DNA of 64,000 nt, taken from the NCBI GenBank assembly GCA_053919585.1, contig CM132791.1, one strand, 5' to 3'. The notes below the pieces were generated by a model. It saw only the letters and a program-made list of their open reading frames with translations. It searched no databases and was not told the DNA's origin. Made by a program: the position numbers and the translations under genes. Position 1 is the stretch's first letter; every line of letters begins with the position of its first letter. The stretch is from Euprymna scolopes. Taxonomy: Eukaryota. This document shows, piece after piece, positions 90 through 42,271 of the stretch.

Positions 90-255
90 CAAATGATTAA
101 TAAAACATGTTAAAAGACATCTTGAAAAAGAGTTAAAAACATATTTAATTTTAAAAAGGAAGCACAAGATAAGTGTATAGTCCTTAATCCGCGGAGTTTC
201 GAAGAAATACCCTCCTTCTCATCAGAAGGCAGGAATTAGCAAAATGCGGGATCGG
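46..255 (-). mobile_element. Penelope-like pseudo-LTR fragment (HHR family A) ending in (TA)n
   Basis: Reverse complement aligns by eye with 31227-31376, which follows a Penelope-type GIY-YIG ORF; runs into (TA)n at ~46-86. Confidence 0.75.
182..228 (-). ncRNA. Minimal type I hammerhead ribozyme (family A, copy 1)
   Basis: Minus strand: ctt CTGATGA gaagga-gggtat-ttcttc GAAAC tccgcgga TTA agg. Core, 6-bp stem II, palindromic stem III region, 3-bp stem I. Confidence 0.75.
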
Positions 256-1273
256 TGTCGCCTTCTGAAAGAAGTGGCAAAGTCTGTTAAGCCTGTGATA
301 AAGCCCCCATTAAAGACATCACATACAAAACCGATTTATATAAGCAGGGGACAACATGAAAACGGACTTTTAGAAAGGTTTGTTCACGGATGAAGGACGT
401 ATCACTCTTGATGGCCCAGATGGCTTGAGCAAGGGATGGGTCCTAGATGGATAACATCGTCATCAGCGTTTAAGGTGCTAACAAGGTGGTGGTGGGATAA
501 TGATTTGGACTGGATTATCGGAGGTACTTTAGTTGGCCCATGGAAAGTTCCAGAAGGCGTTAAAATGACGGAAAATGCTTACATAGCTTTTCTGCAGGTG
601 CACTTTGGACCATGGCTGGAGAAGCAAAGGTTGACGTTCAGAAGAACCAATATTTTGATGCAGAATAATGCTCCTTTGTATGCAGCAAACAAAAGCAAAG
701 AGTAATGCAACAACTGGGGTTCTCTGGGCTACGGAAGAAGGAGTGGCCTGTGAATTGAACCGAATTGAGATTCTTTTGGAGTATCATGAAACGACGCCTC
801 TATGCAAGTGGACGCCAATTTAAGAGCAAAGATGAGTTGTGGGATAATCTCCAAGAAGTATTGCGAGGAATAACTGTTGACGAAATCACAAATTTGACTA
901 ATTCTGTGGACCAACGTCTTTTACAAGTAATTCATAAAAAAGGATTGCATATCCTCTACTAATTATTTCACGTAGAAATTGTTATGTAGTTCTTGTGTTC
1001 TAAGCATTTTTCCTAGTTCATTTAATGTTGGAAAATTATTTCAATAAACAAGTTATGTGTATATTGTGTTTTTTTCTCAAACTCGTTAATACCGTGACCC
1101 ACTGAAATCAACAGATATCCCTGTTTTCTGCCATAGTTTCGCTAATACTGCTTTAAATACTTTTATTTTCTGACTGGAGTAACTGAATAGTATTGCAAGC
1201 ACTTTCTCAAAGTTTCATGGATTTTTATTCACTAAATATTTAAAAAAATGTAAACTCGTTTTAATTTGACACG

Positions 1274-1279
<6 letters not shown>
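256..1279 (+). mobile_element. Tc1-like DNA transposon relic, 5'-truncated, frameshifted transposase
   Basis: Fragments FTDE..ITLDGPDG, GTLVGPWKVPEGVKM, MQNNAP, WSIMKRRLY..QFKSKDELW match the Tc1 DDE domain; probable right TIR ~1250-1279 followed by (TA)n. Confidence 0.85.
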
Positions 1280-1324
<45 letters not shown>

Positions 1325-1852
1325 TATATTCATATATTTATCTACTACCATCTACATATGCGTGCGTATGACTCAATTATTTTCAAAGACTCGTATTTGC
1401 CACAATATTACTGATCTTTGAACCTCGGCCAAAATATATAAATTATGTTTACAATAAATCCAATTAGTCTCTTCACAATTTTAAGGACACGTCTAAACTG
1501 TAACAGCCTTGTTATTTGAGAAAAAATATAACTTATTTTTTCTTCTAATTGATTATGTCTGTTACGGTGTATTATGCTGCTCTGTATTCAGACATTTAAT
1601 CGTGTCATTGATACTTTTAAATAGAGAGGAAAGTAGCGAAATAGTTGCCGAACTCTGAAATTATTTCAGCTATTATATCATTTTGTAAAACTAGTCTGAG
1701 TACCTGATAATGCCGGGTCTCTGAAAGCTTTCTTTTGAAATCGTAAAAAGATAAGTAAAAACATAAGTGATTTGATCAGGTTTATTATTTGGATCTATGT
1801 CAGCTAGGAAATAACGGTGACATTAGAGCTAATGAAACCTAAAATTTTCTTG

Positions 1853-1928
1853 TGAGAGAGTCGAACCTAATCGTAGGAATATACGATTTAAATTAACGGT
1901 GAACACTTTACTCAAATAGCCACCGATC
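1853..1928 (-). pseudogene. Degenerate tRNA-derived sequence (SINE head or pseudo-tRNA) with long variable arm
   Basis: Minus strand: GGTGGCTATTTGAGTAAAG (A-box-like), hairpin TCGTA-tattcc-TACGA, GGTTCGACTC (B-box). Acceptor and anticodon stems decayed. Confidence 0.4.
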
Positions 1929-2799
1929 AAACAAAAATATTTTGTTATTATTATAGCAGAGTGCGTATGATAAATATCAGCACTAACCGAAATATAGGTG
2001 GCTAACTAAGGTATTATCATCATTAGCAGCGTTTGAGCACATATGCAAAGTAGCAAGTGTGTAAGGGCTTGCATCAGAAGAAAAGAAATAAATGACAGCA
2101 TGTGGTCGGAAAGAAACAAATTGCGCGGCGGTAAAGATGGACGTGTAAAGTTGAAGACGATAAATGGCTGACTATGGTCGAATAGGTGGACCTGTGACTT
2201 CGTTGTGGCAGCGAGGGACTTTTAAGCTGGTGTTGAGATGGCGGGGTTTTTATAATCTCATGGCAGACGAAATGAACAGTAAAAAAAATAAGAAGCAAGG
2301 AATGTTTGAAACGTGACAGTAATAAATGCCTTTTGCTAAAACAGAAAAAAAGTCGGATTTATTTTTGTTTCTTTCTTTCCCTGCGACGTTACATTATGAC
2401 ACACCTAAAATGTTTATGAGGTCAGCGTAGGATTACAACCTCCGCATTAAAATAAAATATTTCGATATTTTATTTTATTAAGTTATCACTTCTTATCCCC
2501 CTCGTGGTTTAATGTAAGTGAGTGTCAGGTTGCACTGATTATCGGGAGTGGTAGAATTTGGATAGTGTTTGATTATTTAAGAAGACGGCTTTACAATAAT
2601 TTGTTTACATTAGACTTCAAAACGACCATGTTAAAGTTCGTTGTGAATAATTCGATTGTACTAAATGAATAAATACGAGAACAAATTTAATTTTTAATAA
2701 AACAAACGTCGAATTGACTATATTTATTTATTGACAATGGAAAGGTTTAGAAGTGTGTGATTCAATCGGCTTGCAAAGAATACGCTACAATGTCTGATC

Positions 2800-2990
2800 A
2801 TTTTCTTTTTCAATCTTCACCCCAAACAAGGCAAGTGCCACTTTGAAGTAGGGGGCTACTATTGAGGACAATTTGCGGAGGCTTTATGAAGGGAGATAAG
2901 TAGAAAGATGTTTGTTCACATTACACTTGAACTTCAACATATCAGTACAGTTGGGAAAGCAGTATCCTGGAAGGGAGTTTCAAAGACACA
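2800..2990 (-). mobile_element. 3' end fragment of CR1/L2-group LINE family 2
   Basis: Reverse complement matches 17300-17480 (aagttcaagtg..tagtagccccct..ccttgtttggggtgaa plus A-rich tail). Confidence 0.8.
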
Positions 2991-3157
2991 TTTGATTCAC
3001 CAATTTGTGCAATTAATCTTCACATAAACATTATGATTATCTCATACGGTAAATAAGTTACAAAAAACTAACAAGACTTTTGTATAAATAACCATATTTT
3101 ATTTATGTGAGTATAAGTTACTCGATTATAAAACGAAAATTAAATTACAATATTTCT

Positions 3158-3161
<4 letters not shown>

Positions 3162-3224
<63 letters not shown>
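3162..3224. repeat. (AAT)n microsatellite
   Basis: Direct inspection. Confidence 0.95.
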
Positions 3225-3225
<1 letters not shown>

Positions 3226-4740
3226 TGCTAGAAGGAGTGAAGTAAATAGATTAACAAAATGATCATGAAATGCTTTTTCAGAACTGATCCTTATGATGAA
3301 ACTGGAAAGGACATCAAGGGATACAGAAAACGAGGGAAGTTGGAATCAACAAAATAAGACACGCAAAAGTAATTTGGAAGAATTGTTGCTTATCAGAGGT
3401 GAAAGTGGAGGCCATAAAAAGGCAGGTGAAGTAATAGGCGATAACATGTTAAACGACGATGTCCAAAATGATTAGGGAAGGGCAGACGATAAAGTGAAAG
3501 ATGTGTATGAAGCCGCAGGAAATAGAGAGGTAGCAAATACGAGGTGATTGGTAATGATGGGGAAACTGATGATAAGGTGCTGGAAGAAACTGAAGAAGTG
3601 AAAGGAATTATTAAAAGACTGATGGAGATCATGTTTTTAGAAAAAAAGAATTAAATATTTTGAATTGTTGTGAATGTCCGCATTTGAGAAGAAGTATGAA
3701 ACAATGGAAAGGGTTATTGATATCAAACGGAGAAGATCTGGTTCAAACTCATGTTAATAGAAGGATTTTTAGTGGGGGGGGGCAACTTCCTGTCATTGTG
3801 TTTTATTTTGAGTATGTTATTATTTCTGTTCATATTACCCAAGGTAAATCCGTGTTATTAGTTGGGAAAAGAAAGAGTAACGGGTAAACCATTTAGTATG
3901 GATGACGTAAAACTGTATCCAAAGAATGAAAAAAAAACCCAGCCAATTAATGACATTTGTATAGAATTTTACATGAAAGAAGTGCGGTGTCGGATATTGA
4001 AAGGAGAAAATTGTCGAAAGCGTTTGAATAGGGGTAAGATAAAAGAGGTTGGAGAAGTAGGATACACCTACTTAAGCGCTGTGGAATTAGATAAAATAAC
4101 AGAGCTAAAATAAAGAGAATAATAGGAAAAGAACAGAAGCGAAGACTACGGTTGATTCTTAAGTCAAGATTGAATGCGAAAAAGAAAATATCCACAGTAA
4201 GCACATTGGCAGTAGCTATATTAAGATATGAGGTGGGTATTATTCAATGGAAATAAAATGAGCTGGAGGATATGGACAGGGAAACACGGAAAACGATAAA
4301 AAGGAATGAAGCTCTCATACAAAGAGTGATGTCTATAAATTATATGTGAAAAGAGGTAGCACGATGGCTATTATGTGTAGAACGATGCGTAAAAGTAGAA
4401 GAAAATAGTTCGAAAGTTTATATCTCTAACTAAAAAGAAAAAGCTTATAAAAAAGTGGCATAATTTGACAAATTGCAAGAGAGTGAACTAGTAAGGAGAA
4501 AGGAATTTAAGACAATAGATGGAGAAAAAGTGAAAGACGTGAATTATAAATGGCCATTTCAGTAGAGATCTATCAGAGGCAGTGAACGAGGGGAAAACCT
4601 GGCGAACGTTGTCAAAATGTAACTTGAAGGTTGGGACAAGATCCCTAATATGTGCTGGTTAAGAGTCCCCTGTATTGACTTTGTTGTTGAAAGATGAAAA
4701 TGCACAACACCTTGTCAGTAGTTGTGAAAAGTTAAAAAAT
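3225..4740 (+). mobile_element. Highly decayed R4/Dong-like non-LTR retrotransposon
   Basis: Residual RT-thumb motifs (FSMDDVKLY, YTYL, AVAILRY, LEDMDRETRK) similar to 23650-24200; abuts (AAT)n. Confidence 0.6.
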
Positions 4741-4934
4741 AAACACAGTTTTCATATTTTTTATTAGTAAATCAATCATCTCGATCTGTGCAATGAAGTT
4801 ATTAAACTTATAAAAACTGCTGCCAATATATTGTATTAAGGCAAATCGATATGGCAAATCGAAGAAAAGATGCAAAGAAAGCATGCAGATTTAAGAACAA
4901 TTTAAGTAAAGAATAAGTTATCGGAAATGGCATT

Positions 4935-6355: not shown

Positions 6356-8004
6356 GACCAATATAATGTTTGATCATTTACTGCCAACTCGATTTTTTCA
6401 AGTCGCCTTTCATAAAAACTATTTCTTGCTCTTACGGCTTGACAGCCCAACTGATCTTAAACATACAGGTATATACATGGTTCAACGTGAATGAGTTTTT
6501 TTTATGTCCGTGCGTCAGTTGCACACTTTCCTTCACATGTGGGTTTCAGGATAAAAATATTTATTGCATAAAAATGTTCTTGCGGTAAAAATGGTTAAAC
6601 TTATAGCGATAGTAGCGTTGAACAATATTGCTTAAACGGACTGTTCAAGAACGACTAGAAACTGTTTTTTTGACAGCTAGAAGGACTTAAAAGAGTGAAT
6701 GACGTCATATCTGATGCTGACCATTCTATGAATTTTTAAAGGCGCAATGAATCAAATATCAAAGAAGGTATCCTCTAAAGTATAACGACAAAATAACATA
6801 ATGGCCACTATTGATATGCTTAAAGAGAAGCTTAAAATGTTTCAAAATTTAAAACACCCACACCTAACGGTGTAAAAAATATCAATTTCAAAACCTCTTG
6901 TTTCTTTTCATACTTTTGTAGCAATAATAAATGGCTATCTGAAGACATATTGCTTTCCTGAGTGGCTGACAAAAACGTACTGGAGTCATGATTATAAACG
7001 ATAAGACAAAAGGGAATGAGATACTAAACTATAGATTAATCACTTGTCTCTCAGTTATGTGGAAACCTTCATATATTGTCTGTATATATCTATGAACATT
7101 TAAATCAACACACTTTGCTGCTTAAGGAACAGAAGGCCTGACAAAAAAAACCCATATAATATCAAAGATCAACCTCTGATTGAGCCTGAGAAACTACAGA
7201 CAAAGAACTACTATCCTTATCATACAATTGATAGATTATAGGAAAACACTTTACATAGATGCAAAAATGCTTAGATATTTTCAGAATACCCCCAAACATT
7301 TAAACAACGTTAATACATGGCATGAAAAATTGATAAAATAATTTCACTTCAAGAGGATCAGCAGAATCAAATGTGTACACTATGTGAGTTAAACGGGGCT
7401 TTCGGAAAAAAATTCTTTCTGGCTTTGAAAATAGTGCAGGTGCCTGAGGGATGACACACATTTGACTTTACCTTTACTTTTGTGCAATTTGGCTCTTGTG
7501 ACAAGGATTGCGTCGATAGTGAATTACTCTCTGAAGCAGTAGAATGATCTAATCAATACGATATCGCACCCGTTGTTAATCTTCATTAAAAGTTATTTCT
7601 GAAACGTTGTTTAAACTATAAATTAAATTTCAATTTATTTATCCTTTATTTGATGTTGTTTTCTAATGTTCTTATTGAATTTCCTTACTTAATTTTATTC
7701 CGGTAATTTAAACAATCAGTTATAATCGTAACTTTTTATGTCTCTGTAATTGTACCACAAAACAGGACCGTTTCGCGTCAGATTAGAGGATAGTGTATTA
7801 CATAATCATAATCCAGCCATTAGTGCATCTTAGATTTATCCAACAGATAATTGAATTGTTACCATAATATTATTTTGGATGAAAATAATATCAGCCTACT
7901 TATCTATGATGAAGGTACAGTAATGCCTATAACGGACGGATTCCACCAACTGAGAAACCACTAGACCAACATCATCACCAGCAGAAGATCAACAACACCA
8001 GCAG

Positions 8005-11000: not shown

Positions 11001-11220
11001 GGGGACAGATCACTGGAGGACATCCCCAATTCAAGACTTTGCAATCTGAAGAAAAAGACCTTAAGCTACAAGTTTACAATGCTACACGTGCCTGGTGCCA
11101 AGCACTGTGCTGCCAATACCGTATCTAGTCACCCAGTTGGAAGGCCTGACAATATGGTTCTCATTGATGACATAGCCTCTGTTGATGGCTACTGCCACAA
11201 ACCACCCCAAGGGTGATAAA
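8005..11220 (+). mobile_element. Ty3/Gypsy (Mag-like) LTR retrotransposon relic: gag, protease, RT, RNase H; integrase missing
   Basis: Gag with two zinc-knuckle remnants (CTYCGKKG; CNNCRRMNHFEAVC), protease ALADTGCQ, RT APQG..KCIDDAL, RNase H TTDWSKNGIG / EDEALAV / VDHKLL; many stops and frameshifts. Confidence 0.92.
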
Positions 11221-11325
11221 GTCAGGTGGGCAACCAAATTTAGCAAAGACTGCGCACATGGCAGGTCGGGGTACTTTGTCAAAGGCCTTTTCTAAATATC
11301 ATAAAATATGTTTATTTTCTGATAT

Positions 11326-13602: not shown

Positions 13603-13923
13603 ATAAATAAGTAAATAGAAATAAAACAGAGCGATCACATACGATGAACTTGTCGATAGAATCCGTGTGTCTTTCCTTGGTATGATTTCAAACGATTCAG
13701 ATTGTTCAATCTGTTATTTATTTAAGATGTAATATTTGATAAGATTACAAGAAGTTATTTGGGTTTTATTCGTGATAACTATAGTAATGTTTCTGATTAA
13801 ACAGTAAGTATGTGTGCTTGTATGTGTAAATAAAAAAAACCCCGAAAAAGTTCCGTTTTCATTGGGCGATATGTACAGTGAAAACCCTTATATATGGTTT
13901 TGGTACCCTAGCATAAGTATAAA

Positions 13924-14715: not shown

Positions 14716-15337
14716 GTCGTCGTGTGTGTAAATGTATATAAATGTAATTATCACCGGTTATATGTGTCTCCAATATGTACCCGCTCCGTAACATAAATAC
14801 AGCGAAAATCGAATCCAAATATATGCTTGTAAATAGGCACGCACGCGCAAGCAAGGGTAAACACGCGCACACAAATACGAAATGTACATTGATAAATTCA
14901 AATATAAACTAAGTAATTGAAAATGTAAATATACACAGTATGCATATATTTCTTTTCCATTAATACTAGTAGAAATAAAATGAAAAATAATATATACTGT
15001 ACACACGACCGCTCTGTGGAACACTAGCAGGCACAAACTGTTACGGAATTAGATTTGCACGACTGCGTAAACAAACTAACAAGGAAAAAATANNNNNNNN
15101 NNNNNNNNNNNNNNNNNNNNNNNNNNNNNNNNNNNNNNNNNNNNNNNNNNNNNNNNNNNNNNNNNNNNNNNNNNNNNNNNNNNNNNNNNNNNNNNNNNNN
15201 NNNNNNNNNNNNNNNNNNNNNNNNNNNNNNNNNNNNNNNNNNNNTCCAACGAGGGAAAAATGAATATTTAAAAGAGTGTAGCCATCAACAATTGTGGGGG
15301 TTTCAGCCTTTTATCATGTTTTTATTTTAAAATATTT

Positions 15338-15378
15338 TTATAACGTGTTTCAAGCTTTGGTTCGCTTTCTTCAGATAT
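15338..15378 (-). ncRNA. Minimal hammerhead-like motif (family E, left arm)
   Basis: tat CTGAAGA aagc-gaaccaaa-gctt GAAA cacg TT ata. Perfect 4-bp stem II; very short stems I and III. Confidence 0.55.
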
Positions 15379-16104
15379 TTTTGTGAAAAGGTTTTTTTTT
15401 TAAATGTGAGGTTGAAATGTTATTTTTACATCTGCTGATACTAAATGTGTTTTTCAGAGTGATGTGGTCTCAGACATTCTGTCTCCAATAGTAAGTGTTG
15501 GTAGTGTCCGGTCAGAGTTAATTTCAAAGAGGGTGCTTTTGGTCCATTTGGTGAAGGTTTTTATGTCTTTTTTATGACTTTCTTTCCCCATGTATAGCAC
15601 ACATTCACACACAATCACACACACATATACATACATGTACATACACACATGCACACGCATACGTACGGAGGCATATACACATACACACGCACATACATAG
15701 AAATATATGTAGGAGCATACATATATACATACCCACCTACACACTCACACACGTACTCACACACATCCACCAACTAATATATCACACACAAATTGGTTAT
15801 TTTTATTTATTTATTTTTTTCCAATCAAAACGCGGATGCATACATGTACTTAATCATTCAAACATAAATACACGCACACACACAAGTAAGATGGGGAATA
15901 GGTAGGAGAACATATATATACACACACACACCGCACACACACATATACATGCACATACACATATATATACATACATGTATGCACATACACACTCACATAC
16001 ATCCGCATACTATGCAGACATACACACATACATACACGAACATGCAGATGTAAAAATAACATTTCAAACTCCCATTTAATAAAAAAAAAAACCTTTTCAC
16101 GAAA

Positions 16105-16145
16105 ATATCTGAAGAAAGCGAACCAAAGTTTGAAACGCGTTATTA
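16105..16145 (+). ncRNA. Minimal hammerhead-like motif (family E, right arm)
   Basis: CTGAAGA aagc-gaaccaaa-gttt GAAA cgcg TTA; palindromic CGCG at stem III. Confidence 0.5.
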
Positions 16146-16212
16146 AAATATTTTAAAATAAAAATATGATAAAAGGCTAAAAAACCCACAATTGTTGATG
16201 GCTACACTCTTT

Positions 16213-16215
<3 letters not shown>

Positions 16216-16277
<62 letters not shown>
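16216..16277. repeat. (TA)n microsatellite between two HHR elements
   Basis: Direct inspection. Confidence 0.95.
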
Positions 16278-16280
<3 letters not shown>

Positions 16281-16328
16281 CACTGACAGACAGCATTGCA
16301 ACCAGCAAAAACCACAAAAGCCAACAAA

Positions 16329-16387
16329 CCGGAAGTCCAAGACTCAAGTTTCGCTCTCATTTGGGCTCATCAGTCAGACACATCCGA
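16329..16387 (-). ncRNA. Type I hammerhead ribozyme (family C)
   Basis: Minus: cggatgt-gtctga CTGATGA gccc-aaatga-gagc GAAAC ttga GTC ttggac-ttccg. Stem I gtctga/ttggac (two G-U) extended by cgga/tccg; predicted cut between 16341 and 16340. Confidence 0.82.
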
Positions 16388-16456
16388 ACTTAGGATTCGA
16401 CACGCGAGCCTCTTGCATGCGAGGCAAGCACTCTACCAACTGAGGAAACGCGCCGC
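16388..16456 (-). pseudogene. tRNA-Ala(CGC)-derived Pol III head (SINE-like), immediately 5' of the hammerhead
   Basis: CTCAGTTGGTAGAG (D arm/A box), perfect anticodon arm CTTGC-CT-CGC-AT-GCAAG, GTGTCGAATCC (B box-like); acceptor stem broken. Confidence 0.8.
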
Positions 16457-16764
16457 ACACAAGAAATAGATCAAAGAAACCGCAAGATAAGCATCCATTG
16501 CTCAATCACATATCGTTTTGCTTTTGTAAATTTTTAATAATAAACAAATAAATTGTAAAAAAATAAAAGTACTTGTTTTTACAATTTATTTATTATTAAA
16601 TTTTAAGAAAAATAAAACAATATATGCTTATTTTCTTTAAAGCAAAATTGAAAATAATTTCTCGTTATAAGGGGGGAAAAATTGTACAATTCCGTAATTT
16701 CTCTTTGCAATTTCATACAACGGAGATACTTCCGCTCGTATTTTCCAATTTATTCCGATAGCAA

Positions 16765-20364: not shown

Positions 20365-20396
<32 letters not shown>

Positions 20397-20554: not shown

Positions 20555-20589
<35 letters not shown>

Positions 20590-26358: not shown

Positions 26359-26370
26359 ATATATGTATAT

Positions 26371-27340: not shown

Positions 27341-27476
27341 TATTTTAAGCGTTTTTAATCATGAATTGAAGTCTCTCCTTCATGATTGCGTTATATATAT
27401 ATATATATATTATTTATATATTAAATAATATATTTATGTATATATATATATTCATATTTATATATTCTCACCACAT

Positions 27477-27740
27477 ACACACACACACACACGCACACAC
27501 ACATATATATATCTCGCTAGATTCAGCCACTCTGATGAGTCGTAGACGGCGAAACACGTGTCAGTTGATAATTTTGGTTTAAAAATAATATATATGCCGT
27601 TCCCCATTTAAGGGGGTACCAAATTGGTCAAATAGAAAATTATTCCCAACTCGCATTTAGGTAAAAAATACAATATCGTATAAATAATTGAATACATTCA
27701 AAAAGTACCGCTAACAAAAACAAATAAAAACATCTATATA
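27477..27740 (+). mobile_element. Short HHR-bearing element (family B, copy 1) flanked by the direct repeat TATATTCTCACCACAT
   Basis: Repeat at 27461-27476 and 27741-27756; the ~200-bp body is homologous to 42073-42271. Confidence 0.8.
27527..27567 (+). ncRNA. Minimal type I hammerhead ribozyme (family B)
   Basis: ccact CTGATGA gtcg-taga-cggc GAAAC acgt GTC agttg; palindromic ACACGTGT at stem III; predicted cut after 27562. Confidence 0.85.
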
Positions 27741-27764
27741 TATATTCTCACCACATTATCCATA

Positions 27765-29498: not shown

Positions 29499-29644
29499 TG
29501 CCTACACTTTTGCACTATATATATATATAAAATGAAATATGAACTATTTTCGTCTTCAAGTTATTCTTCTTCCCATCCTCCATCTGATATAGTTACTAAT
29601 CCAATACAGCACTGGAGCAGCCCTTCCATCTACAATCATACAAC

Positions 29645-29676
<32 letters not shown>

Positions 29677-30209
29677 TTAATGAGAATAATAATATTTCTC
29701 CTAACAGCCATCCTAACACCAAAAACACTCATTATCCCCTCCAAAATAGTCCTCATACAGACATTGTCCCACCATTTGTTGAACACTATGAACAAAATTC
29801 AAACTATTTAACTAATACAAATCAGCAAATTAATATTAATACCAGACCTCGAGCTTTTAATAAAGTACATGCATATATCGGCGCTACTTCAACATTAATT
29901 AAGAAAAGAATATCAAACCACATTTCTTCTTTTAACAACCATAATTCTAATAATAATCAAGGAACTTCTCTAACCATTTTAATTTAAAAACTTAACTCTA
30001 ACAATACTCCCTTCTCAATCAAATGGAATATTATAAAAAAAGCTAAGTCTTATACTTCAGGCTCTAAATCATGTCGCCTCTGCATAACCGAAGCTATAAC
30101 TATAATTACTTCCCCTCAAAGTAACAATATAATAAATTCTAAAAATGAACTGATCTCTTTCTGTAAACATAAGTCCAAATTTAATTATGGCAAGTTTGAA
30201 ATTACATAG
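29499..30209 (+). pseudogene. Penelope-type GIY-YIG endonuclease with one in-frame stop at 29985
   Basis: One frame reads CL..CTIYIYK-[~110 aa N/S/P/H-rich]-AYIGAT..KKRISNHISSF..SLTILI*KL..IKWNII..CRLCITE..INSKNELISFCKH, the PLE endonuclease pattern. Confidence 0.8.
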
Positions 30210-31253
30210 TTATTACTTTTACCCTTTATATAGATAAAAAGATTTTTCTTTAACTTTATCGTTTTTCGACATACTTCTTAATAATTTATAATTTAATAAT
30301 CCTTTATTTTAATTCTTTATCTCTTTGCATGTCCGGTTTTTATCTGCATTTTTGTTTTATTCTTTAAACTTTCCTATCTATCTAATATATCAATCTACCC
30401 ACACTTTCATTTTACTATATGCATTTACTTACTTTTTTTTCTTGAATTTGCAGATACCGGCCATCCTCTCCCCTTATATAAATTTTATTTTTTATTTTTA
30501 TTCTTATCTTATTTTATTTTATATTTTATATTTTATTTTTTTATTATATTATATTTTATTTATTAATTTATTTATTCTTTATTTTCTATATATTTATTAC
30601 TAATTTATTTATTTATTTTTTATTTTCCTTTTAGTGTCGTTTAACAACTCTTGCTGACATTTTTTTAAGTGATGACTTGTACATTTCAGTTGACCTATAT
30701 TATTTTGCCCTATATATTTTTCGCGCCTTTAACATTTCCTGTCTGGGTCATTTTGACTTTTGTTTCCCTTTATTTTATATTTTATATTTAACTTTATCAT
30801 TATTTTTTAATTTATTTTCTCTTCTTTCTCTTCCCAGATCTTTCTTATTTATATTTATGTCTCAGAAGTAGAGTGAAAATCTCATCTTATTTTTCTTTTA
30901 TTAATATTATTGGAATCTTTTCTGTTTTCCTTGTACACATTTTTGTGAATTATTCCATGGATTTCTGCCTTTGGATTATTGTGGACCATCTTCTTCTATT
31001 TACGGGATCTCCTTGGATTTTACGTGTACAAATGGAAATTCTTTTAACTTTTTTGAAGTTGTACATTTGTATTTTACCGTCACTGGATTTTTTTATTTTC
31101 CACCAGACTATCCATTCGTGTGTAATCACCTTTTCTTTACCATATTCCCTCTGCTTCACTTTTTTTGTTTTCAAGTAAGATCTTTGACTTACTTGTTGTT
31201 TCATCAAATACTTCTGCATGCAAAATCCGATCCCGCATTTTGCTAATTCCTAC

Positions 31254-31300
31254 CCTCTGATGAGAAGGAAAGTATTTCTTCGAAACTCCGCGGATTAAGG
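31254..31300 (+). ncRNA. Minimal type I hammerhead ribozyme (family A, copy 2)
   Basis: cct CTGATGA gaagga-aagtat-ttcttc GAAAC tccgcgga TTA agg. Confidence 0.78.
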
Positions 31301-31959
31301 ACTATCCATTTATCTAGTGTTACCTTTTCAGATTAAATATGTTTTTAACTCATTTCAAAGTGTTTTTTAACATATTNNNNNNNNNNNNNNNNNNNNNNNN
31401 NNNNNNNNNNNNNNNNNNNNNNNNNNNNNNNNNNNNNNNNNNNNNNNNNNNNNNNNNNNNNNNNNNNNNNNNNNNNNNNNNNNNNNNNNNNNNNNNNNNN
31501 NNNNNNNNNNNNNNNNNNNNNNNNNNNNNNNNNNNNNNNNNNNNNNNNNNNAAACTCGAAACAACTTAACTCTACTAATCCTGTTCTGCTAATGTTCTCG
31601 TTTTTAAATCTATTTTGTCAATTATGACTGGTACCACCCTAAACCAGTACTTAAATAACATTCTCCAATGCAAAAAACATAAGCTCCCTTCACAATTCCC
31701 ATTAACGGAAGGTTCTACCTCGAGGTATCTAAAGCAAAGAAAAAAAAAACTTCCACGGATTAATATGGGAGAGGGGAAACTATCTTCAAGTACTATCCTA
31801 AACTGAGAATGGGGTAAAGGACTTATACTAAGTAGATATTAATAAGTCCTTCTTACTTTTTTTTTTAATGGAGAGTAGATAATACAGTGGATGTGTCATC
31901 GGCAGCTCCAGTAACTCGCGCTTCTCCTTTTTTGTCCCCCAGTCCTCATTTCCAATGAG

Positions 31960-34900
31960 TGATGTTTCTGATAAAGGGTGAAGAAAAAGCTGCTTAAAGG
32001 TCGGAAGTACTTCGAGAACAGTAGTCTGAGATGCCGGAAATTTTCTGTCTCTATGTCTATCCTTGCGGCCATGTCACTAGTAAGGGTGCTGGAGGTAAAC
32101 ATTTTCATCTGGGCTGACATTAACCGCCTGATAGTCAGGAATCATAACCTTGGATTGACCACTAAGGAGGCTGTCCTATCAGCAGGTGCAAAGTACTGGG
32201 CCTGCTGTATTGCCATTTGGTGAATGGATTCTGGACCATGCAGTAGTCTCTGGTGAGGCCTCTCGATGCCATACTAGTAGGTAATTGTTACGGCTTTACA
32301 TTATCATGTGCTACAAAAAAAATATCTTCCCATCTTTTCTCTCTTACTTTCCCTCTCTGTACTGTTCTAACCAAGTATGCTAACCTGTTCCACAAATCCC
32401 AAAATCCGCGACATGAAATATCTCCAAAAAAAGACACAAATAAACTTAGAACCCCATCTTCCAACATAGACCACTACTACCATGTCTCCTTCTCCAACGT
32501 ATGGGGTCTACGTTCCAACCTTCCAGAGGTTGAAACCCAATTATAGGAGACAAAAGCTTTTTCTAAGCAAAACTGGAATAGGGCCGACCACCTCCCTAGA
32601 TGAGTTCATAATTAATGGATACTCCAACTTAACATCTAAATCTGACCCCCAAGATCGCCATGGGTGGGGAATATGTGCCTACATTAAGGATGGCTTCCCG
32701 TGTGGCAGGGATATCTCTAGAGAAGACCTTAATTTACCTTATATGTGCTTCCGAGTTGCACTTGCTTACAGCACTGCATTTATATTTGCCTTCTATCGCC
32801 CCCACAACAGCGGAGTTACTATCTTTAAGAGTGTATATGAGAAAATTGACCACATCCTGTCTGCTCACGTTCACATTTGCGGTGACTTCAATGTCTACAA
32901 TGTGAAATGGCTGACCCACTCAAATACGCCTGATGATGAGGGGAGGTTTTGTCATGATTTTGCCATTGCCTATGACCTCACTCAGATTGTTCGCGAGCCC
33001 ACCCGTGCCTGATACTACCAGTCAGTACGCAAACCTTCTAGACCTTTTTCTCTTCATTTCCCCTGAACTATGATCATGTGCCGTTCTATCTCCTCTGGGA
33101 TCCTCCGACTACTCTGTTGTATCAGTTAAGATAAAAATGAAATATAATAAGTCTACAGACATACTTCTCCACCATACTGTATACTGATACTCTATGGCTG
33201 ACTGGAATACCTTCCGTACATTCATATCTGATCTACCTCTCGATTCCATGTTTAAAAAGGATGTCCTCTATAGTATCAGACCTGACCGAATGGTTAATTG
33301 TAGGCATAAACCAATTCATACCATCCAAAAAATTCCAACATAAACCTAACAGCCAGCCATAGTTCTCCCCTGAATGTGCTGCTGCCATTGCACACAGAAA
33401 CCACTTTTTCCATAGCTACCAACGTAATAGATGCACTGAAACTAGAGCTGCTTTCAGAACCGCCAGCAACCACTGTAAAAAAGTAATAAAAAATCCGTTA
33501 AATTCAAAGTAGCTGAGCAGCGGCTTGGTTCCCACCAGTTCTAGCAAATAGCAAATAGGATCCTGAACAGAAGCGTGCGTTCTATCCCAACCATTATCAA
33601 TGTGCCCGAGGTCATGTCGTCAGCATCAGACAAGGCCAAACTATTTGCCAAGAACTTTGCAGCTTACTTTACCCTCTGCGACAAAGGCCATCAACTCCCC
33701 ATATTTCCTCCTACAATACACAACGCGCTAGGTAACATACAAATATCTGTGCATGAGGTCACCAGGCTAATCAAGAACCTTGATTCCAGTAAAGCAACTG
33801 GCCCTGACGGTATTCCAATTATACTGTTAAAAAAGCTACAACCAGAATTTGCTCACATACTTACAAAACTGTTTAAGCGTTGCCTTAAGGAGAAGTGCTT
33901 TCCAACACCCTGGAAAACCTCATCAGTATGCCCTGTATTTAAGAATTCAGGTGATAAGTCATCTCCGTCTCAATACAGACCAATAAGTCTCCTGAGTGTC
34001 ATGAGTAAGTTGCTGGAATCCATATTAAATAGAAAAGTAGTCAACCACCTCAGCAGAAATAACCTTCTAAGTGACATGAATAATGGTTTCCGCTCTGCAA
34101 GATCTACAGTAGATGTGCTTACTGTTATATCACATAGAAGCAGCGAATCTCTCGACAAAGGCTTCATTTCTAGGGAAATTGCTCTTGACATATCAAAGGC
34201 CTTCGATAAGTTATGGCATAAAGGCCTACTTCACAAGATTTCCAGCTATGGTATAACTGGAAATGTTTTCTCTATCATTAAATAATTTCTTTCTGATAGG
34301 CTCATAAGAGTAGTGGTTGGTGGGCAGAAATCAGAGGCCCACAGTATTAATGCTGGAGTCCTTCAGGGGTCGATCCTGGGCCCAACTCTCTTCTTAGTCT
34401 ACATCAATGATCTCCCAAAACACATACTAAAATCATTCGTTGACATCTATGCTGATGGCACGACTATTTATGGCAACACATCAAAGGCCGCAAATGACAG
34501 CGTTCTCTCTGATTCTCTCTCCTCAGATCTTGAGCGCGTGATTCAATGGGGGAAGAGGTGGCTTCGTACCTTTAATGCATCTAAGACCAAGCTCCTATGA
34601 TTACATCATAAACGCTATGATCCCCATCTGGCATCGATTATCCAATCTATTCCTTGCTTCCTTTGTTCCAGCTCGTTTAACTCATTGGTCTAGTAATCTT
34701 TATCAATTTGCTTTCATATCTGTTGCCAAGGTCGCTGGGAAAATGGTGGGGTCCTTCTACCGCTCCAGAAGATATCTCACTGATGATACAATTCTCTATC
34801 TATATAAAAGCCAAGTACGTCCAAGGATGGAGTACTGCTGCCATATCTGGGCAGGAGCTGCTAAAAGCAGCCTATCCTGCCTTGACAGAGTACAAAATAA

Positions 34901-35373
34901 ACTTTGTGGCTTGGTAGGGGATGCCGTTTTCTCTTCCCTGCAACCTCTCTCCCACAGAAGAGACGTTGCGAGCCTGTCTCTGTTTTATCGTTATTTCCAT
35001 GGCAAGTGCTCGTCTGAGCTCCATTCTCTGGTCCCCCCTCGCCAATTATTCACGAAAACCACCCGACTAGCTGAAACCACTGTCAATAATTTTCCCCACT
35101 CTTTATCCGTGCATAAATCAAAACGTAGATTCCAGAAGTGCACGACTGTGGAACTCTCTTCCGTTTGCCTGTTTCCCACCTGACTACAACTTGGATGTCT
35201 TCAAGTCCAACATAAACAAATTCCTGATGACCTGCCCCCTAAGTAATGACACCTTATCAAATCCCCAATACTATTACTACGATACTATCCCTTAGATTAC
35301 TGTACACACAATAATCCTTATCCCCGAGTGGCCCCTGGGCCTTGATAAGTGGTTAACCCTATGTAAAAAAAAA
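31960..35373 (+). mobile_element. Near full-length CR1/L2-group LINE family 1 (APE-RT, disrupted), 3' stem-loop and A tail
   Basis: SNVWGLRSN, ICGDFN, KATGPDG, YRPISLL, ALDISKAFD, GVLQGSILGP, YADG(T), RPRMEYCCHIW; 5' boundary approximate. Confidence 0.93.
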
Positions 35374-35672: not shown

Positions 35673-36136
35673 TAGAACGAATAACTATCTAAAGCATGTA
35701 AGCTTATAAAAACGGAGGGAAAATAAAGACAATGGTCAATTACAGAAAAATTCACCTATAGGTACAGATAAGAAATTAGAATTATATGATCATTTAATAA
35801 AGCTAGTGTACTTAGCAGTTGAGTAGATTTACTAGTTTATGAAAATTTCTGTAAATAAGGAGTACCATAAAATATAGTTGCAAGTAGTACAGAAACTAGA
35901 TTAGATTAGACTATTTTAGTGAAAAATTAAGGTGGTGGAGTAAGTATGTGATTTAGGAGGGGTGATTTATTATGCCTACAATTAATTGATGTCTCTTGCT
36001 TTTTTATTTTAAGAGCCTATCACTATCCTTTAATATTTTGATAAACAGCATTTCATTCAAAGGAAGAAATTAGAATTAACCATTTGAATTTATTTTAATA
36101 ATTTCTCAGTTTAAAATTGGTGTTAGCTTATTTATT

Positions 36137-36246
36137 ATTTGTTCCCTGTAATATAAAAAAGTGATTTATCACTATTTTATATTACAGGGAACAAATGTGA
36201 TTTATCACTATTTTATATTACAGGGAACAAATGTGATTTATCACTA
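36137..36246. repeat. 29-bp-arm hairpin (36137-36196) followed by 36-bp tandem copies of its right arm
   Basis: atttgttccctgtaatataaaaaagtgat-TT-atcactattttatattacagggaacaaat; one mismatch. Confidence 0.9.
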
Positions 36247-36611
36247 TAAGCTGAATTAACAAAAACAAACAAAAACCCAGCCGTTTTAAACGCTGACCTG
36301 TTGATTTGTTTTTTTTTTTTTGTCGTCTGATTTCTATGGTTATTTAGTTGTAAAGTAAAGTGTGAAGATCGTCATTGTCTGCACTCGGAACGTGAGGACA
36401 AACATGAAAAAAAAAAAAACCAAAACAAACAAAAACAAAAACAAACAAAAAATCCAGCCGTTTAAACGCTGACCTTTTGGATTTGTTTTTTTTTTTTACC
36501 TTTGATTTTTATGTTATATACAAATGACAAGTTATGTGTAAAATAAATGACAAAAATTTGTATTCCAAAATTCATCATGGTGACCATCTGATAATTTATT
36601 CCTTTAATTCA

Positions 36612-36725
36612 GTTGACTTATACAGTTCTTGACAGTATCTGTTTCGTAGCGCAAAATCAATCACTTAATTATTATATCAATTAGTGAATCTATTATGCCC
36701 TTTACTCATCAGAAGAAATAGCAAC
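36612..36725 (-). ncRNA. Type I hammerhead ribozyme with long stem II (family D)
   Basis: Minus: ttctt CTGATGA gta..(long imperfect hairpin)..tac GAAAC ag-ata-ct GTC aagaa. Perfect 5-bp stem I and 4-bp stem III; predicted cut between 36631 and 36630. Confidence 0.85.
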
Positions 36726-37350
36726 AATCAATCCATCAAAAAGAATTGAAATGTGATTTGACATGGTAAAAATCCGAAAATTGGAAGAGAAGATGCAGTT
36801 ACCTTTATATTTTTCCATTACGCCATATTGAATTTTATATATATACTGGACTATCAGTGAACCGTTGGGTCAGTATGTTGTATTAGCTATCGAATTCATG
36901 TATGAGAGTGGCAATTGTGACGTAAAGAAAATAGTTTTTTTTTTGACATAACAGAAATATTTCTATGAAAGTATATTAAAATGAAAAAAGAATATAGATA
37001 GATTTCTTTGAGTCGTTCTGTTTATTATAATTGATTATTTTTGAAAAATAAAAACAATTTACAGTTACTGAATTATAAGTGGTTAGCCATACTTATAGAT
37101 AAAGGTGCACTGAACAGATACCATAATACTTATTATAGTTAAATTCAAATTTTGATATATCTGTTTTGTTTTTTTTACATCGTTCATTTCTGCATTACGT
37201 TTAAGTTATTTTAAACCCCACTCTTCCCATGTTAAATAATAATTTCGAAATAATAACGTTAATATTGCAGTGCGCAGGTCATGCGCACATGCGCAACCGG
37301 ATGTCGTAAGTGGATTACATATATCGTTACAAGGTCATTTGAGTTCTATA

Positions 37351-37426
<76 letters not shown>

Positions 37427-41066: not shown

Positions 41067-41261
41067 TGGTATTATTTTACGCCCTGCCCCAGCATAGTAT
41101 AAACACCCCCAATCACCCCATGTTAAGAACGGTTTTTAGAATACCCCCTCAACCTCCTCATGTTAAGAACGGCTTTTGAGGTTGTTTATCCTGAAAGCCA
41201 CTCTTAACATAGGCAGATTAGGGTATTTATAATACGCTGGGGCACGTCGTAAAAATTTACC

Positions 41262-41262
<1 letters not shown>
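41067..41262. mobile_element. Fold-back MITE-like palindrome
   Basis: Left ttttacgccctgccccagcatagtataaacaccc..atgttaagaacgg is the imperfect reverse complement of the right arm; followed by (ATT)n. Confidence 0.75.
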
Positions 41263-41321
<59 letters not shown>

Positions 41322-41939
41322 ATATAAATAAATAAAAAAAAGAACGTACTCAGAAAGACACCCATTTATTTAAATATATTTTGTTTAACTACGTTCGTTT
41401 TATTACTTACATTACTTACATTAAAATGTTTTGTGTAAATAGAAAAAATTTCTTTAATCCTTAAAAGTTTTGTAAATATCTAATATTAAAAAACATGTTT
41501 TGTAAATATATATTTTTTCTTTAAAATTTTAAAAAGTTTTGTAAATATATTTAAAAAAAATATTGCTCGCGAACATTCGACCATGTCTGCTATATGACGT
41601 GTTTATAAACAACCAACGGAAATATCAAGGTCGAACAACCAGTGTCACTTGAAATATTCGCCAGTATACGTCTTCTGCTATGAGGTATCTAATCTTTACT
41701 TGATCCCTAAGATGTTCACCTTCGCGATAGCATCAGTAGTCCATCTTTCCCTGTTTCCTCCCTCAACCGAGTCAAACTCCCATCTTTTATTTTATCACCC
41801 GGGACTACCAAAACACTCTTAATTTGCATAATCGCATTAGTCTTGTATCTGATGAGTTCCAATTTTGTCTGCTACTGATATTCTTACAACGGACACATGC
41901 TAACCGTAGCCACTTATTTCTATGTTTCTCCGCATTGTT

Positions 41940-42018
<79 letters not shown>

Positions 42019-42019
42019 G

Positions 42020-42075
42020 AAGATAAAATCATCCACTGGCAAGTATTCCGTTGTCCACAACAGATCAGAGTGGCT
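42020..42075 (-). ncRNA. Degenerate family-B hammerhead, inverted relative to the adjacent copy
   Basis: Minus: agccact CTGATct gttg-tgga-caac GgAA tactt GcC agtgg. Stems I and II intact, core mutated. Confidence 0.6.
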
Positions 42076-42271
42076 AAATTCAGCCACTCTGATGAGTCGT
42101 AGACGACGAAACACGCGTCAGAGGATAATTCTATTTTAAAAATAATATATAGGTCGCTCCTCATTTAGGGGTACCAAATTAGTCAAAGGGAAAATTATTC
42201 CCAACTTGCATTGAGATGAAAATGCTATTAGTATAAATAATTGAATTCATTTAAAAAATATCGCTAACAAA
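42073..42271 (+). mobile_element. HHR family B element, copy 2 (hammerhead at 42084-42124)
   Basis: ccact CTGATGA gtcg-taga-cgac GAAAC acgc GTC agagg; body aligns with 27516-27720. Confidence 0.85.

What the first reader, a model, noticed from the sequence alone, without database searches (positions are those of the whole stretch)
182..42124. Dense set of hammerhead-ribozyme mini-elements: about 8 motifs in 5 unrelated families, mostly docked on (TA)n
Seen: CUGANGA..GAAA..UH cores with pairing stems at 182(-), 15338(-), 16105(+), 16329(-), 27527(+), 31254(+), 36626(-) and 42084(+), plus a decayed one at 42030(-). Families A, C and E and copy B1 end in or next to (TA)n; copies A2 and B2 run into N-gaps. 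Known: minimal HHRs with palindromic stem III occur in Penelope-like element pseudo-LTRs and in retrozymes, and can cleave as dimers. Inference: several non-autonomous ribozyme retroelements share one Penelope-type RT/GIY-YIG machinery with a TA-microsatellite preference.
Basis: partly seen in the sequence, partly recalled or inferred. Interest (0 to 1): 0.85.

Follow-up and report, generated by a model that had tools for sequence, protein, structure and literature searches.

The report
Hammerhead-ribozyme retroelement copies in TA microsatellites
The window holds nine decaying copies of five abundant non-coding jumping elements that each carry a hammerhead self-cutting RNA motif and were inserted, Penelope-style, into (TA)n microsatellites; the class is already known and this genome is full of them.

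Summary
A simple descriptor finds 6 in the window against 0.06 in shuffles. Only 16335-16379(-) passes Rfam's threshold.

Each motif lies in one of five mutually unrelated repeat families. Each family has hundreds to thousands of copies at 88-98% identity in this 5.9-Gb, mollusc-like genome.

Stems differ between families but stay paired. In four families helix III is a palindrome, and two copies are predicted to fold into a double hammerhead.

Five of six readable 3' ends in the window abut (TA)n, against 1.5% by chance. In other loci the figure is 79 of 117.

All families show marks of Penelope-like (PLE) insertion: graded 5' truncation, a short extra tail at one end, and head-to-head truncated partners (34 against 1 tail-to-tail). 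The genome has at least 150 GIY-YIG matches in frames of up to 870 aa.

Two "mini-elements" are really the 3' parts of longer units. The tRNA-like-plus-HHR family is a 410-bp retrozyme-like unit, and RNA-seq assemblies contain it.

Verdict: new members of a known kind, namely PLE pseudo-LTR fragments and non-LTR retrozymes. The scan reached the same class on other DNA of this genome (s1-295546, s1-288421, s1-279839).

The parts
104..255 (-). It is a 5'-truncated 3' fragment. The HHR spans 182-229, with its core starting at 225 and H17 at 186. The 3' end lies 19 nt from (TA)19 at 48-85.
15264..16043 (-). The HHR is at 15339-15377. The 3' side runs into the N stretch 15093-15244, so that junction cannot be read.
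16044..16222 (+). Family A, inverted 5'-truncated partner, head-to-head with the main copy. The HHR is at 16106-16144, with stem I weakened. The copy ends in (TA)31 at 16216-16277.
16277..16466 (-). Family D, a 5'-truncated copy of a unit of about 410 nt. A degenerate tRNA-like segment is followed 3 nt later by the HHR at 16335-16379 (Rfam 36.4 bits; one stem II pair is broken). The 3' end abuts the same (TA)31 as family A, from the other side.
27512..27734 (+). Family C, copy 1. The HHR is at 27529-27565. (AT)n lies at both ends. A 16-nt direct repeat at 27461-27476 and 27741-27756 encloses (AC)n(AT)n plus the unit.
29548..31376 (+). Family B, copy 2, a unit of about 1.9 kb. Its 5' end is sharp and lies 19 nt after (TA)7 at 29516-29529. 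The HHR is at 31254-31300. The 3' end runs into the N stretch 31377-31551. The frame 29532-29987 holds a weak YIG-like motif.
36542..36845 (-). Family E unit. The HHR is at 36626-36717, with a stem II insert of about 60 nt and a true helix III hairpin of 4 bp plus a 3-nt loop. (TA)5 lies at its 5' end (36836-36845) and none at its 3' end.
42005..42079 (-). Family C, decayed inverted 5'-truncated partner with both core boxes lost. It ends in (TA)35 at 41943-42012.
42073..42271 (+). Family C, copy 2, head-to-head with the decayed partner. The HHR is at 42082-42126 (Rfam 24.6 bits, below threshold). The helix III palindrome and stem I are each broken by one change. The copy runs into the N stretch 42272-42411.

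Best explanation
The nine sites are dead or dying copies of five unrelated families of non-autonomous retroelements. Each family carries a type-I hammerhead ribozyme about 60-180 nt from its 3' end.

Inferred mechanism. Tandem or read-through transcripts are cut by the ribozyme. In four families the cut is made by a double hammerhead that forms through an extended palindromic helix III between two copies. In family E the ribozyme acts alone. The RNA is then copied into DNA from its 3' end at a nick made in a (TA)n microsatellite by the RT/GIY-YIG enzyme of Penelope-like elements.

This route leaves four marks: variable 5' truncation, an optional short tail, often an inverted 5'-truncated second copy head-to-head with the first, and microsatellite on both sides.

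Families A and B are 3' parts of longer, RT-less PLE-derived units with GIY-YIG remnants. Families C, D and E are short units of 235-410 bp of the non-LTR retrozyme type. D also carries a tRNA-like module next to the ribozyme.

Shown here: the motifs, the families, pairing and covariation, (TA)n adjacency, the junction anatomy, abundant GIY-YIG frames, and the D-type unit in RNA-seq assemblies. Inferred: self-cleavage, dimer action, circular RNA, and which enzyme moves which family.
For: Motifs and chance:
- The descriptor gives 6 hits against 0.06 in shuffles.

Families:
- Own-genome DNA searches give 149 to 3,422 first-look candidates per family. The 40 scored copies of each are 88-98% identical.
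- The family B unit gives 5,075 candidates, most of them starting at the same base.

Structure:
- Stem II differs between families but stays fully paired: AAGC/GCUU, GAAG/CUUC, GUCG/CGAC, GCCC/GGGC.
- Helix III is its own reverse complement in A, C and D, and B holds an 8-nt palindrome.
- Cofolding two copies gives the double hammerhead as the minimum-energy structure: D -33.7 against -25.8 kcal/mol for two monomers, C -28.5 against -20.2.
- On an alignment of D and C copies, 95.4% of cells are paired, against at most 39% when partners are slid. Seven of 14 pairs change on both sides.

(TA)n:
- In the window, 5 of 6 readable 3' ends abut (TA)n, P about 5e-9.
- In other loci it is 79 of 117, against a deliberately inflated baseline of 0.129.
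- (TA)n also lies at the 5' junction of 12 of 22 B copies and 7 of 17 C copies.

PLE anatomy:
- 34 head-to-head, 1 tail-to-tail and 13 tandem neighbour pairs.
- A tail is present on one arm and absent on the other.
- 5' ends spread over many positions while the 3' end is shared.
- A GIY-YIG remnant lies 1.5 kb upstream of the family A arm in L037 and L042 (PF01541, E 3.8e-4).
- A PLE-type EN fragment sits in the same (TA)n as an E copy in L090.
- 150 of 150 scored GIY-YIG matches exceed the cut-off, in frames of up to 870 aa and often in head-to-head groups.

D family:
- tRNA model hits above threshold lie 3 nt before the HHR in other copies.
- 410-bp arrays exist.
- RNA-seq contigs of four studies hold up to 62% of the unit's words.

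Literature with the same features: PMC4209133, PMC7229834, PMC8557442, bioRxiv 10.64898/2026.07.22.740005.
Against: - Only one window motif passes Rfam's threshold, and families A, B and E are never reported by RF00163.
- Family A has A10.1-U11.1 instead of the usual G-C, and an all-A/U stem I of 3 bp.
- Family B has a mismatch next to the A15.1-U16.1 pair and an ambiguous register.
- No RT was seen next to any family, and no autonomous element with matching ends could be read.
- 5' ends of copies do not pile up at the predicted cleavage site in my small sample.
- Family E's 3' end carries (TA)n in only 8 of 21 copies.
- The covariation rests on comparing families, so it reflects few independent events.
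Confidence: 0.82

Rival explanations
1. The elements are SINEs moved by a LINE. On this view the (TA)n is the element's own 3' microsatellite tail and not a target, and the hammerhead is a passenger.
For: - (TA)n is much commoner at the 3' end than at the 5' end for D (34 of 50 against 5 of 65) and for E.
- D has a tRNA-like module.
- LINE remnants are present in the window.
- The 5'-truncation gradient fits any target-primed reverse transcription.
Against: - Head-to-head truncated partners (18 against 0 tail-to-tail for D, 6 against 1 for E) and the optional tail are PLE marks, not LINE marks.
- Truncated B and C copies have (TA)n on both sides.
- The tRNA-like part is not at the 5' end of the D unit.
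- My 5' boundaries for A and D were not the true unit ends, so their low 5' counts mean little.
Confidence: 0.08
2. The inverted pairs (15264-15478 with 16044-16222, and 42005-42079 with 42073-42271) are terminal inverted repeats of TA-targeting DNA transposons (MITE or foldback elements), and the hammerhead-like strings are coincidental.
For: - Arms of 176-234 bp at 92% identity flank about 570 bp, with TA-rich flanks.
- Tc1/mariner-type elements duplicate TA.
Against: - The arms are unequal: one carries a tail and the other does not.
- The partner arm has any length, from 33 to 230 nt.
- The interior is collinear with only one arm and continues upstream to a GIY-YIG remnant.
- Single arms and tandem forms are common.
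- The flanks are long (TA)n runs, not a TA dinucleotide.
- The same core with compensating stems recurs in five unrelated families.
Confidence: 0.03
3. The motifs are real relics, but the ribozyme has no part in transposition. Hammerheads merely ride on PLE ends, as Craig et al. (2021) suggested, and the copies here were never cut.
For: - Naiad PLEs thrive without canonical HHRs (PMC8557442).
- PLE mini-HHRs cleave poorly in vitro (PMC4209133).
- I saw no pile-up of copy 5' ends at the cleavage site.
Against: - Five unrelated families keep the full core, compensating stems and a palindromic helix III in most copies. That is hard to explain without selection on the source copies.
- Tandem 410-bp arrays and RNA-seq presence fit the retrozyme cycle.
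Confidence: 0.07

Closest known systems
[quoted passage not shown]
   Same: - The same conserved core.
- A short helix III with palindromic sequence, predicted to act as a dimer.
- Massive dispersed copy number.
- Paired motifs 100-700 bp apart on opposite strands.
- A position near the 3' end of the element.
   Different: - Stem II here is 4 bp rather than the 6-8 bp of many PLE mini-HHRs.
- No bulged base lies before 10.1.
- No RT-EN frame was seen next to any window copy. Only GIY-YIG remnants lie upstream of families A and B.
- Family E has a stable helix III and a 60-nt stem II.
Non-LTR retrozymes of animals (Cervera & de la Pena 2020, PMC7229834; Li, Clavereau & Pollet 2026, bioRxiv 10.64898/2026.07.22.740005)
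   Same: - Non-coding units of 170-450 bp with a type-I HHR and low GC.
- Tandem arrays (D 410 bp, C about 300 bp) as well as dispersed copies.
- Presence in RNA-seq data.
- A proposed dependence on PLEs.
   Different: - In the window itself the copies are solo or head-to-head, not tandem.
- Circular RNA was not tested.
- The PLE link here rests on junction anatomy in a mollusc. In the 2026 preprint it rests on sequence similarity of frog retrozymes to pLTRs.
PLE insertion architecture and (TA)n targeting (Craig, Yushenova, Rodriguez & Arkhipova 2021, PMC8557442)
   Same: - An inverted 5'-truncated copy next to the upstream end.
- A short extra tail at one end only.
- (TA)n as the preferred target, which hides target-site duplications.
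- Assembly gaps at such insertions.
   Different: That paper reports (TA)n preference for Naiad, which lacks canonical HHRs and is said there to survive in cephalopods only as remnants, and it suggests the preference for Neptune. Here HHR-bearing units use (TA)n. The PLE clade involved was not determined.
Schistosome Sm-alpha / Sj-alpha SINE-like repeats with a Pol III promoter and a hammerhead (Ferbeyre et al. 1998; Laha et al. 2000; cited from my own knowledge, not read here)
   Same: A tRNA-like or Pol III promoter module and an active-type hammerhead lie in one short repeat, which is found both dispersed and in tandem.
   Different: This is a different phylum with no sequence relation. In family D the tRNA-like part sits inside the unit directly before the HHR, not at its 5' end.

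Membership tests
Hammerhead ribozyme, type I (Rfam RF00163) | Conserved core: CUGANGA, then GAAA, then the A15.1-U16.1 pair and H17 (not G) | tested here: met
   The core is present at eight sites. It is lost at 42005-42079(-).
Hammerhead ribozyme, type I (Rfam RF00163) | Three helices around the core, kept by compensating changes | tested here: met
   Stems I and II pair in natural copies of all five families, with different letters in each. On the D plus C alignment 95.4% of cells are paired and 7 of 14 pairs change on both sides. Several window copies have one broken pair.
Hammerhead ribozyme, type I (Rfam RF00163) | Score at or above the curated gathering threshold (34 bits) | tested here: inconclusive
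   Family D: 36.4 bits in the window and 34-57 bits elsewhere. Family C: 24-28 bits. Families A, B and E are not reported. The model does not allow long stem II inserts or altered helix III lengths.
Hammerhead ribozyme, type I (Rfam RF00163) | G10.1-C11.1 closing pair of stem II | tested here: met
   Met in B, C, D and E. Family A has A-U there.
Hammerhead ribozyme, type I (Rfam RF00163) | Self-cleavage at the UH site | not testable with these tools
   This needs transcription assays.
PLE-associated dimeric hammerhead | Short helix III with palindromic sequence, able to extend between two copies | tested here: met
   Helix III is ACGCGU in A, holds UCCGCGGA in B, and is ACACGUGU in C and ACUCGAGU in D. 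The dimer is the minimum-energy cofold. This is not met by E, which has a 4-bp hairpin.
PLE-associated dimeric hammerhead | Location in the terminal repeat of an element that encodes RT plus GIY-YIG | tested here: inconclusive
   A GIY-YIG remnant lies upstream of family A in L037 and L042. Family B has only a weak YIG-like motif. No RT was seen. No further genome DNA could be fetched.
Penelope-type insertion | An inverted 5'-truncated copy adjoining the upstream end | tested here: met
   34 head-to-head against 1 tail-to-tail neighbour pairs over all five families, binomial P 1e-9.
Penelope-type insertion | A short extra tail present at one end only | tested here: met
   The tail is about 45 nt in family A, present on one arm and absent on the other. 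It is about 22 nt in family D.
Penelope-type insertion | Microsatellite, here (TA)n, as the target | tested here: met
   (TA)n lies at the 3' end in 79 of 117 copies, and at the 5' junction in 12 of 22 B copies and 7 of 17 C copies. In the window it is 5 of 6, against 0.015 by chance.
Penelope-type insertion | An autonomous RT/GIY-YIG source in the same genome | tested here: inconclusive
   There are 15,395 first-look GIY-YIG candidates. All 150 scored exceed the cut-off, in frames of up to 870 aa, many of 804-808 aa, and in head-to-head groups. The RT domain and the element ends were not read.
Non-LTR retrozyme | A type-I HHR in short tandem repeats of about 170-450 bp | tested here: met
   D-type arrays have a 410-bp period. 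C occurs as pairs with a 295-315 bp period at other loci. Neither is tandem in the window itself.
Non-LTR retrozyme | Expression as unit-length linear and circular RNA | tested here: inconclusive
   RNA-seq contigs of four studies hold 30-62% of the words of a D-type unit. RNA ends and circularity were not tested.
tRNA-derived SINE | A tRNA-like Pol III promoter module at the 5' end of the unit | tested here: not met
   The module is real in other copies (RF00005 at 31-33.5 bits against a threshold of 29, ending 3 nt before the HHR). ARAGORN calls none. The unit continues more than 110 nt upstream of the module.

The most novel reading that the evidence does not exclude
In this mollusc, one (TA)n-targeting Penelope-type enzyme mobilises at least five unrelated hammerhead families. 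One of them is a 410-nt retrozyme whose ribozyme is fused 3 nt behind a tRNA-like Pol III module. The head-to-head, tail and microsatellite junctions would then be the first structural proof outside vertebrates that non-LTR retrozymes are PLE-dependent. The insertions may also seed or extend microsatellites, as the 16-nt duplication enclosing (AC)n(AT)n at 27461-27756 hints.
Probability: 0.35. Interest if true: 0.5.

Novelty: new member of a known kind. Interest (0 to 1): 0.3.

Why it matters
The finding adds a large mollusc genome to the catalogue of hammerhead-bearing retroelements. Its junction anatomy (inverted truncated partner, one-sided tail, (TA)n on both sides) can assign short ribozyme repeats to Penelope-type mobilisation even where no sequence similarity to an autonomous element remains. 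That link was stated as open in 2020 (PMC7761336) and argued from frog sequences in 2026.

Practically, these insertions explain several assembly breaks and much of the (TA)n landscape of this region: 8 of its 13 (TA)n runs touch a hammerhead element. The finding does not reveal a new kind of element or mechanism.

Tried and rejected
There is therefore no read-level evidence of cleavage or circles.
Full-length or autonomous elements could not be read, and no unbiased genome background could be sampled.
- ARAGORN finds no tRNA in the window or in 34 loci.
- Pfam finds nothing in the frame 29532-29987. The Atlas gives only a 0.81 lead to GIY-YIG, so the GIY-YIG reading of family B is unconfirmed.
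- Pfam also misses the clear EN fragment of L090, which the Atlas places at 0.97 with animal GIY-YIG clusters. No hammerhead core lies downstream of it.
I found no pile-up in my 20-75 copies per family.
- Minimum-energy folds of single isolated motifs do not give the hammerhead shape, as expected for dimer-type motifs.
- Family A rows could not be aligned in register with C and D by MAFFT and were left out of the pair count.
- 3566-3657(+) matched the descriptor, but it is single-copy in a purine-rich stretch and I rejected it as chance.
- Loci L031, L043, L055, L067 and L079 overlap the window and show letters where the window reads N. I saw some by accident in flank listings. I excluded those loci from all counts and make no statement about the N stretches.

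Full report
SETTING

The window is C9:165912001-165976000 of a 5.9-Gb assembly with 46 chromosome-sized contigs. Runs that hold its sequence are labelled mollusc. By size and contig number I infer a decapodiform cephalopod, but this was not tested.

- A = 15338(-)/16105(+)
- B = 182(-)/31254(+)
- C = 27527(+)/42084(+)/42030(-)
- D = 16329(-)
- E = 36626(-)

N STRETCHES

None of the nine motifs spans an N stretch, so the motif calls do not depend on continuity across N. Three copies end 1-20 nt from one: A at 15264, B at 31376 and C at 42271. Their 3' junctions are unreadable and I left them so.

The own-genome loci L031, L043, L055, L067 and L079 overlap the window and carry letters at those places. 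Some appeared in flank listings. I excluded these loci from every count and say nothing about the masked letters.

Reading the sites shows CUGANGA, a stem II hairpin, GAAA, helix III and UH at all eight named places. At 42005-42079(-) the copy is clearly homologous but has lost its core.

Rfam supports only part of this:
- 16335-16379(-) scores 36.4 bits, above the threshold of 34.
- 42082-42126(+) scores 24.6 bits.
- Nothing else is reported at E<=10.

A relaxed type-I descriptor finds 6 sites, against a mean of 0.06 and a maximum of 2 in 200 block shuffles. One hit, 3566-3657(+), is single-copy in a purine-rich stretch and is probably the expected chance hit. The three named sites that the descriptor misses each carry one broken stem pair in the window copy.

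THE MOTIFS BELONG TO REPEAT FAMILIES

Own-genome DNA searches give these first-look candidate counts, with the 40 scored copies of each at 88-98% identity:

| Family | First-look candidates |
|---|---|
| A | 2,327 |
| B | 149 |
| C | 2,514 |
| D | 3,422 |
| E | 3,250 |

- The families share no similarity with one another.
- Most copies elsewhere read better than the window copies. Most C copies have the perfect palindrome and a 5-bp stem I. Most D copies have GCCC/GGGC in stem II, where the window has a C-A mismatch.
- All 30 best genomic RF00163 hits (50-57 bits) belong to the D superfamily.
- Other D copies score 34-46 bits and other C copies 24-28 bits.

STRUCTURE

I used natural copies as examples and built no consensus.

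| Family | Stem I | Stem II | Helix III |
|---|---|---|---|
| A | UAU/AUA | AAGC/GCUU | ACGCGU |
| B | CCU/AGG | GAAGGAA/UUUCUUC | contains UCCGCGGA |
| C | CCACU/AGUGG | GUCG/CGAC | ACACGUGU |
| D | GUCUAA/UUGGAC | GCCC/GGGC | ACUCGAGU |
| E | UUCUU/AAGAA | imperfect hairpin of about 60 nt | ACAG-AUA-CUGU hairpin |

Cofolding two copies gives the classical double hammerhead as the minimum-energy structure for A to D. In it, helix III is extended between the two molecules and the stem I strands are swapped. The energies are:
- D: -33.7 kcal/mol, against -25.8 for two monomers
- C: -28.5, against -20.2
- B: -27.5, against -15.4
- A: -18.9, against -7.6

On an alignment of 18 D and C copies, 95.4% of cells pair, against 24-39% when partners are slid. 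Seven of 14 pairs differ on both sides between the families. This reflects few independent events but is what a real shared fold predicts.

The weak points are:
- Family A has A-U at 10.1-11.1 and an all-A/U stem I.
- Family B has a mismatch beside the closing pair of helix III and two possible registers.

(TA)n

In the window, 5 of the 6 readable 3' ends abut (TA)>=5 within 19 nt:
- B1 at 48-85
- A2 and D, from opposite sides of 16216-16277
- C1 at 27735-27744
- the decayed C partner at 41943-42012

A random point has a chance of 0.015, so P is about 5e-9. Eight of the window's 13 (TA)n runs touch a hammerhead element.

At other loci, (TA)n follows the 3' end as below, for 79 of 117 in all. 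The baseline of 0.129 is itself inflated by how the loci were chosen.

| Family | 3' ends followed by (TA)n |
|---|---|
| A | 12 of 13 |
| B | 16 of 19 |
| C | 9 of 14 |
| D | 34 of 50 |
| E | 8 of 21 |

Truncated B and C copies also have (TA)n at the 5' junction (12 of 22 and 7 of 17). For these families the microsatellite is therefore a target, not only a tail.

C1 is an exception worth noting. A 16-nt direct repeat (27461-27476 and 27741-27756) encloses (AC)n(AT)n plus the unit.

WHAT THE UNITS ARE

Family B
- It is the 3' end of a unit of about 1.9 kb that starts sharply at 29548, 19 nt after (TA)7. 35 of 40 scored copies start at that base.
- Shorter copies are truncated at 21 different positions but share the 3' end.

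Family A
- It is not a foldback mini-element.
- The interior 15479-16043 is collinear with the (-) arm. In L037 and L042 it continues 1.5 kb upstream to a GIY-YIG motif remnant (PF01541, E 3.8e-4 on 27 aa).
- The (+) arm is an inverted truncated partner.

Family C
- It is a unit of about 235 bp that also occurs as tandem pairs with a 295-315 bp period.

Family D
- It is a unit of about 410 nt. Dispersed copies are truncated at many positions.
- Arrays have a 410-bp period, on C8 and as two head-to-head arrays on C3.
- In other copies the Rfam tRNA model scores 31-33.5 bits (threshold 29) and ends 3 nt before the hammerhead. ARAGORN calls nothing.
- The module is internal, so D is not a plain tRNA-SINE.

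Family E
- It is a 304-bp unit. About half its copies continue 3' into a shared sequence.

INSERTION ANATOMY

Among neighbouring copies of one family within 800 bp, 34 pairs are head-to-head, 1 is tail-to-tail and 13 are tandem (binomial P 1e-9). The partner is a 3' fragment of any length, from 33 to 230 nt.

Families A and D have two alternative 3' ends, with or without an extra 45 or 22 nt before the (TA)n. In A pairs, one arm has the tail and the other does not.

These features are the published marks of Penelope-like insertion (PMC8557442; PMC4209133):
- an inverted 5'-truncated copy at the upstream end
- a one-sided tail
- (TA)n preference
- a hammerhead near the 3' end
- dual motifs 100-700 bp apart on opposite strands

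IS THE ENZYME PRESENT?

A GIY-YIG profile search of the genome gives 15,395 first-look candidates. All 150 scored are above the Pfam cut-off, and many score identically. They lie in open frames of up to 870 aa, often 804-808 aa, and frequently in head-to-head or tandem groups 1.3-5 kb apart. That size fits an RT-EN frame, but I could not read the frames, so RT and matching ends remain inferred.

One 5'-truncated EN fragment sits in the same (TA)n as an E copy in L090. The Atlas places it at 0.97 among animal GIY-YIG clusters.

EXPRESSION

RNA-seq assemblies of four studies, including a second organism label, hold 30-62% of the sampled words of one D-type array unit. This shows transcription of the superfamily. 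It does not show cleavage or circles. Copy 5' ends do not cluster at the predicted cleavage site in my sample.

COMPARISON AND VERDICT

Everything found matches known classes:
- PLE pseudo-LTR hammerheads that act as dimers (PMC4209133)
- animal non-LTR retrozymes (PMC7229834)
- the proposal that retrozymes are non-autonomous PLE derivatives (bioRxiv 10.64898/2026.07.22.740005)

Two points go somewhat beyond the papers I read. First, the PLE link is made by junction anatomy in a mollusc. Second, there is a tRNA-like module fused to the ribozyme, for which the schistosome Sm-alpha repeats are a known analogue (from my own knowledge).

The window's density, 1 per 7 kb, is about twice that of 208 kb of other sampled sequence (1 per 15 kb). 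It is in line with the rough genome-wide first-look count, so the cluster is ordinary here.

Earlier notes of this scan reached the same class on other pieces of this genome. I score this as real, well explained, and a new member of a known kind.

Noticed in passing
window 55607-55718 (-); L020:2722-2820; L001:1997-2113: 5S-rRNA-like sequences score 32.2 bits in the window (below the threshold of 38) and 46.6 and 36.5 bits in two other loci. This looks like a 5S-derived SINE family.
   Followed up: no
window 32482-35183 (+): A non-LTR retrotransposon remnant: a weak Exo_endo_phos_2 match and RVT_1 at E 1.5e-11, in separate frames.
   Followed up: no
window 8000-14000, e.g. 10107-10778 (+): A GC-richer block (0.43-0.46) with a weak RT_RNaseH_2 match, probably an LTR-retroelement remnant.
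   Followed up: no
window 27461-27476 and 27741-27756: A 16-nt direct repeat encloses (AC)n(AT)n plus the family C unit. Here the microsatellite lies inside the duplication, as if it was added at insertion.
   Followed up: partly
window 3566-3657 (+): A single-copy match to the relaxed hammerhead descriptor in a purine-rich stretch, most likely chance.
   Followed up: partly
G000 C8:10432194-10435515; C3:89840417-89842627: Arrays of the tRNA-like-plus-hammerhead unit with a 410-bp period. On C3, two arrays meet head-to-head.
   Followed up: partly
G000, e.g. C12:14496712-14504984; C13:17111032-17117229: Groups of near-identical GIY-YIG matches lie in open frames of 340-808 aa, in inverted and tandem order. 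These are candidates for young autonomous Penelope-like elements.
   Followed up: no
L090:758-1213 (-): A 5'-truncated PLE-type GIY-YIG fragment of 152 aa is inserted in the same (TA)n as a family E copy. No canonical hammerhead core lies downstream of it.
   Followed up: partly
window 36136-36233: A near-perfect hairpin of about 98 nt, reported only as weak miRNA-model matches. It looks like a small inverted-repeat element next to family E.
   Followed up: no
window 15093-15244, 31377-31551 and the own-genome loci L031, L043, L067: Loci returned by the own-genome search carry letters where the window reads N. I did not use them.
   Followed up: no
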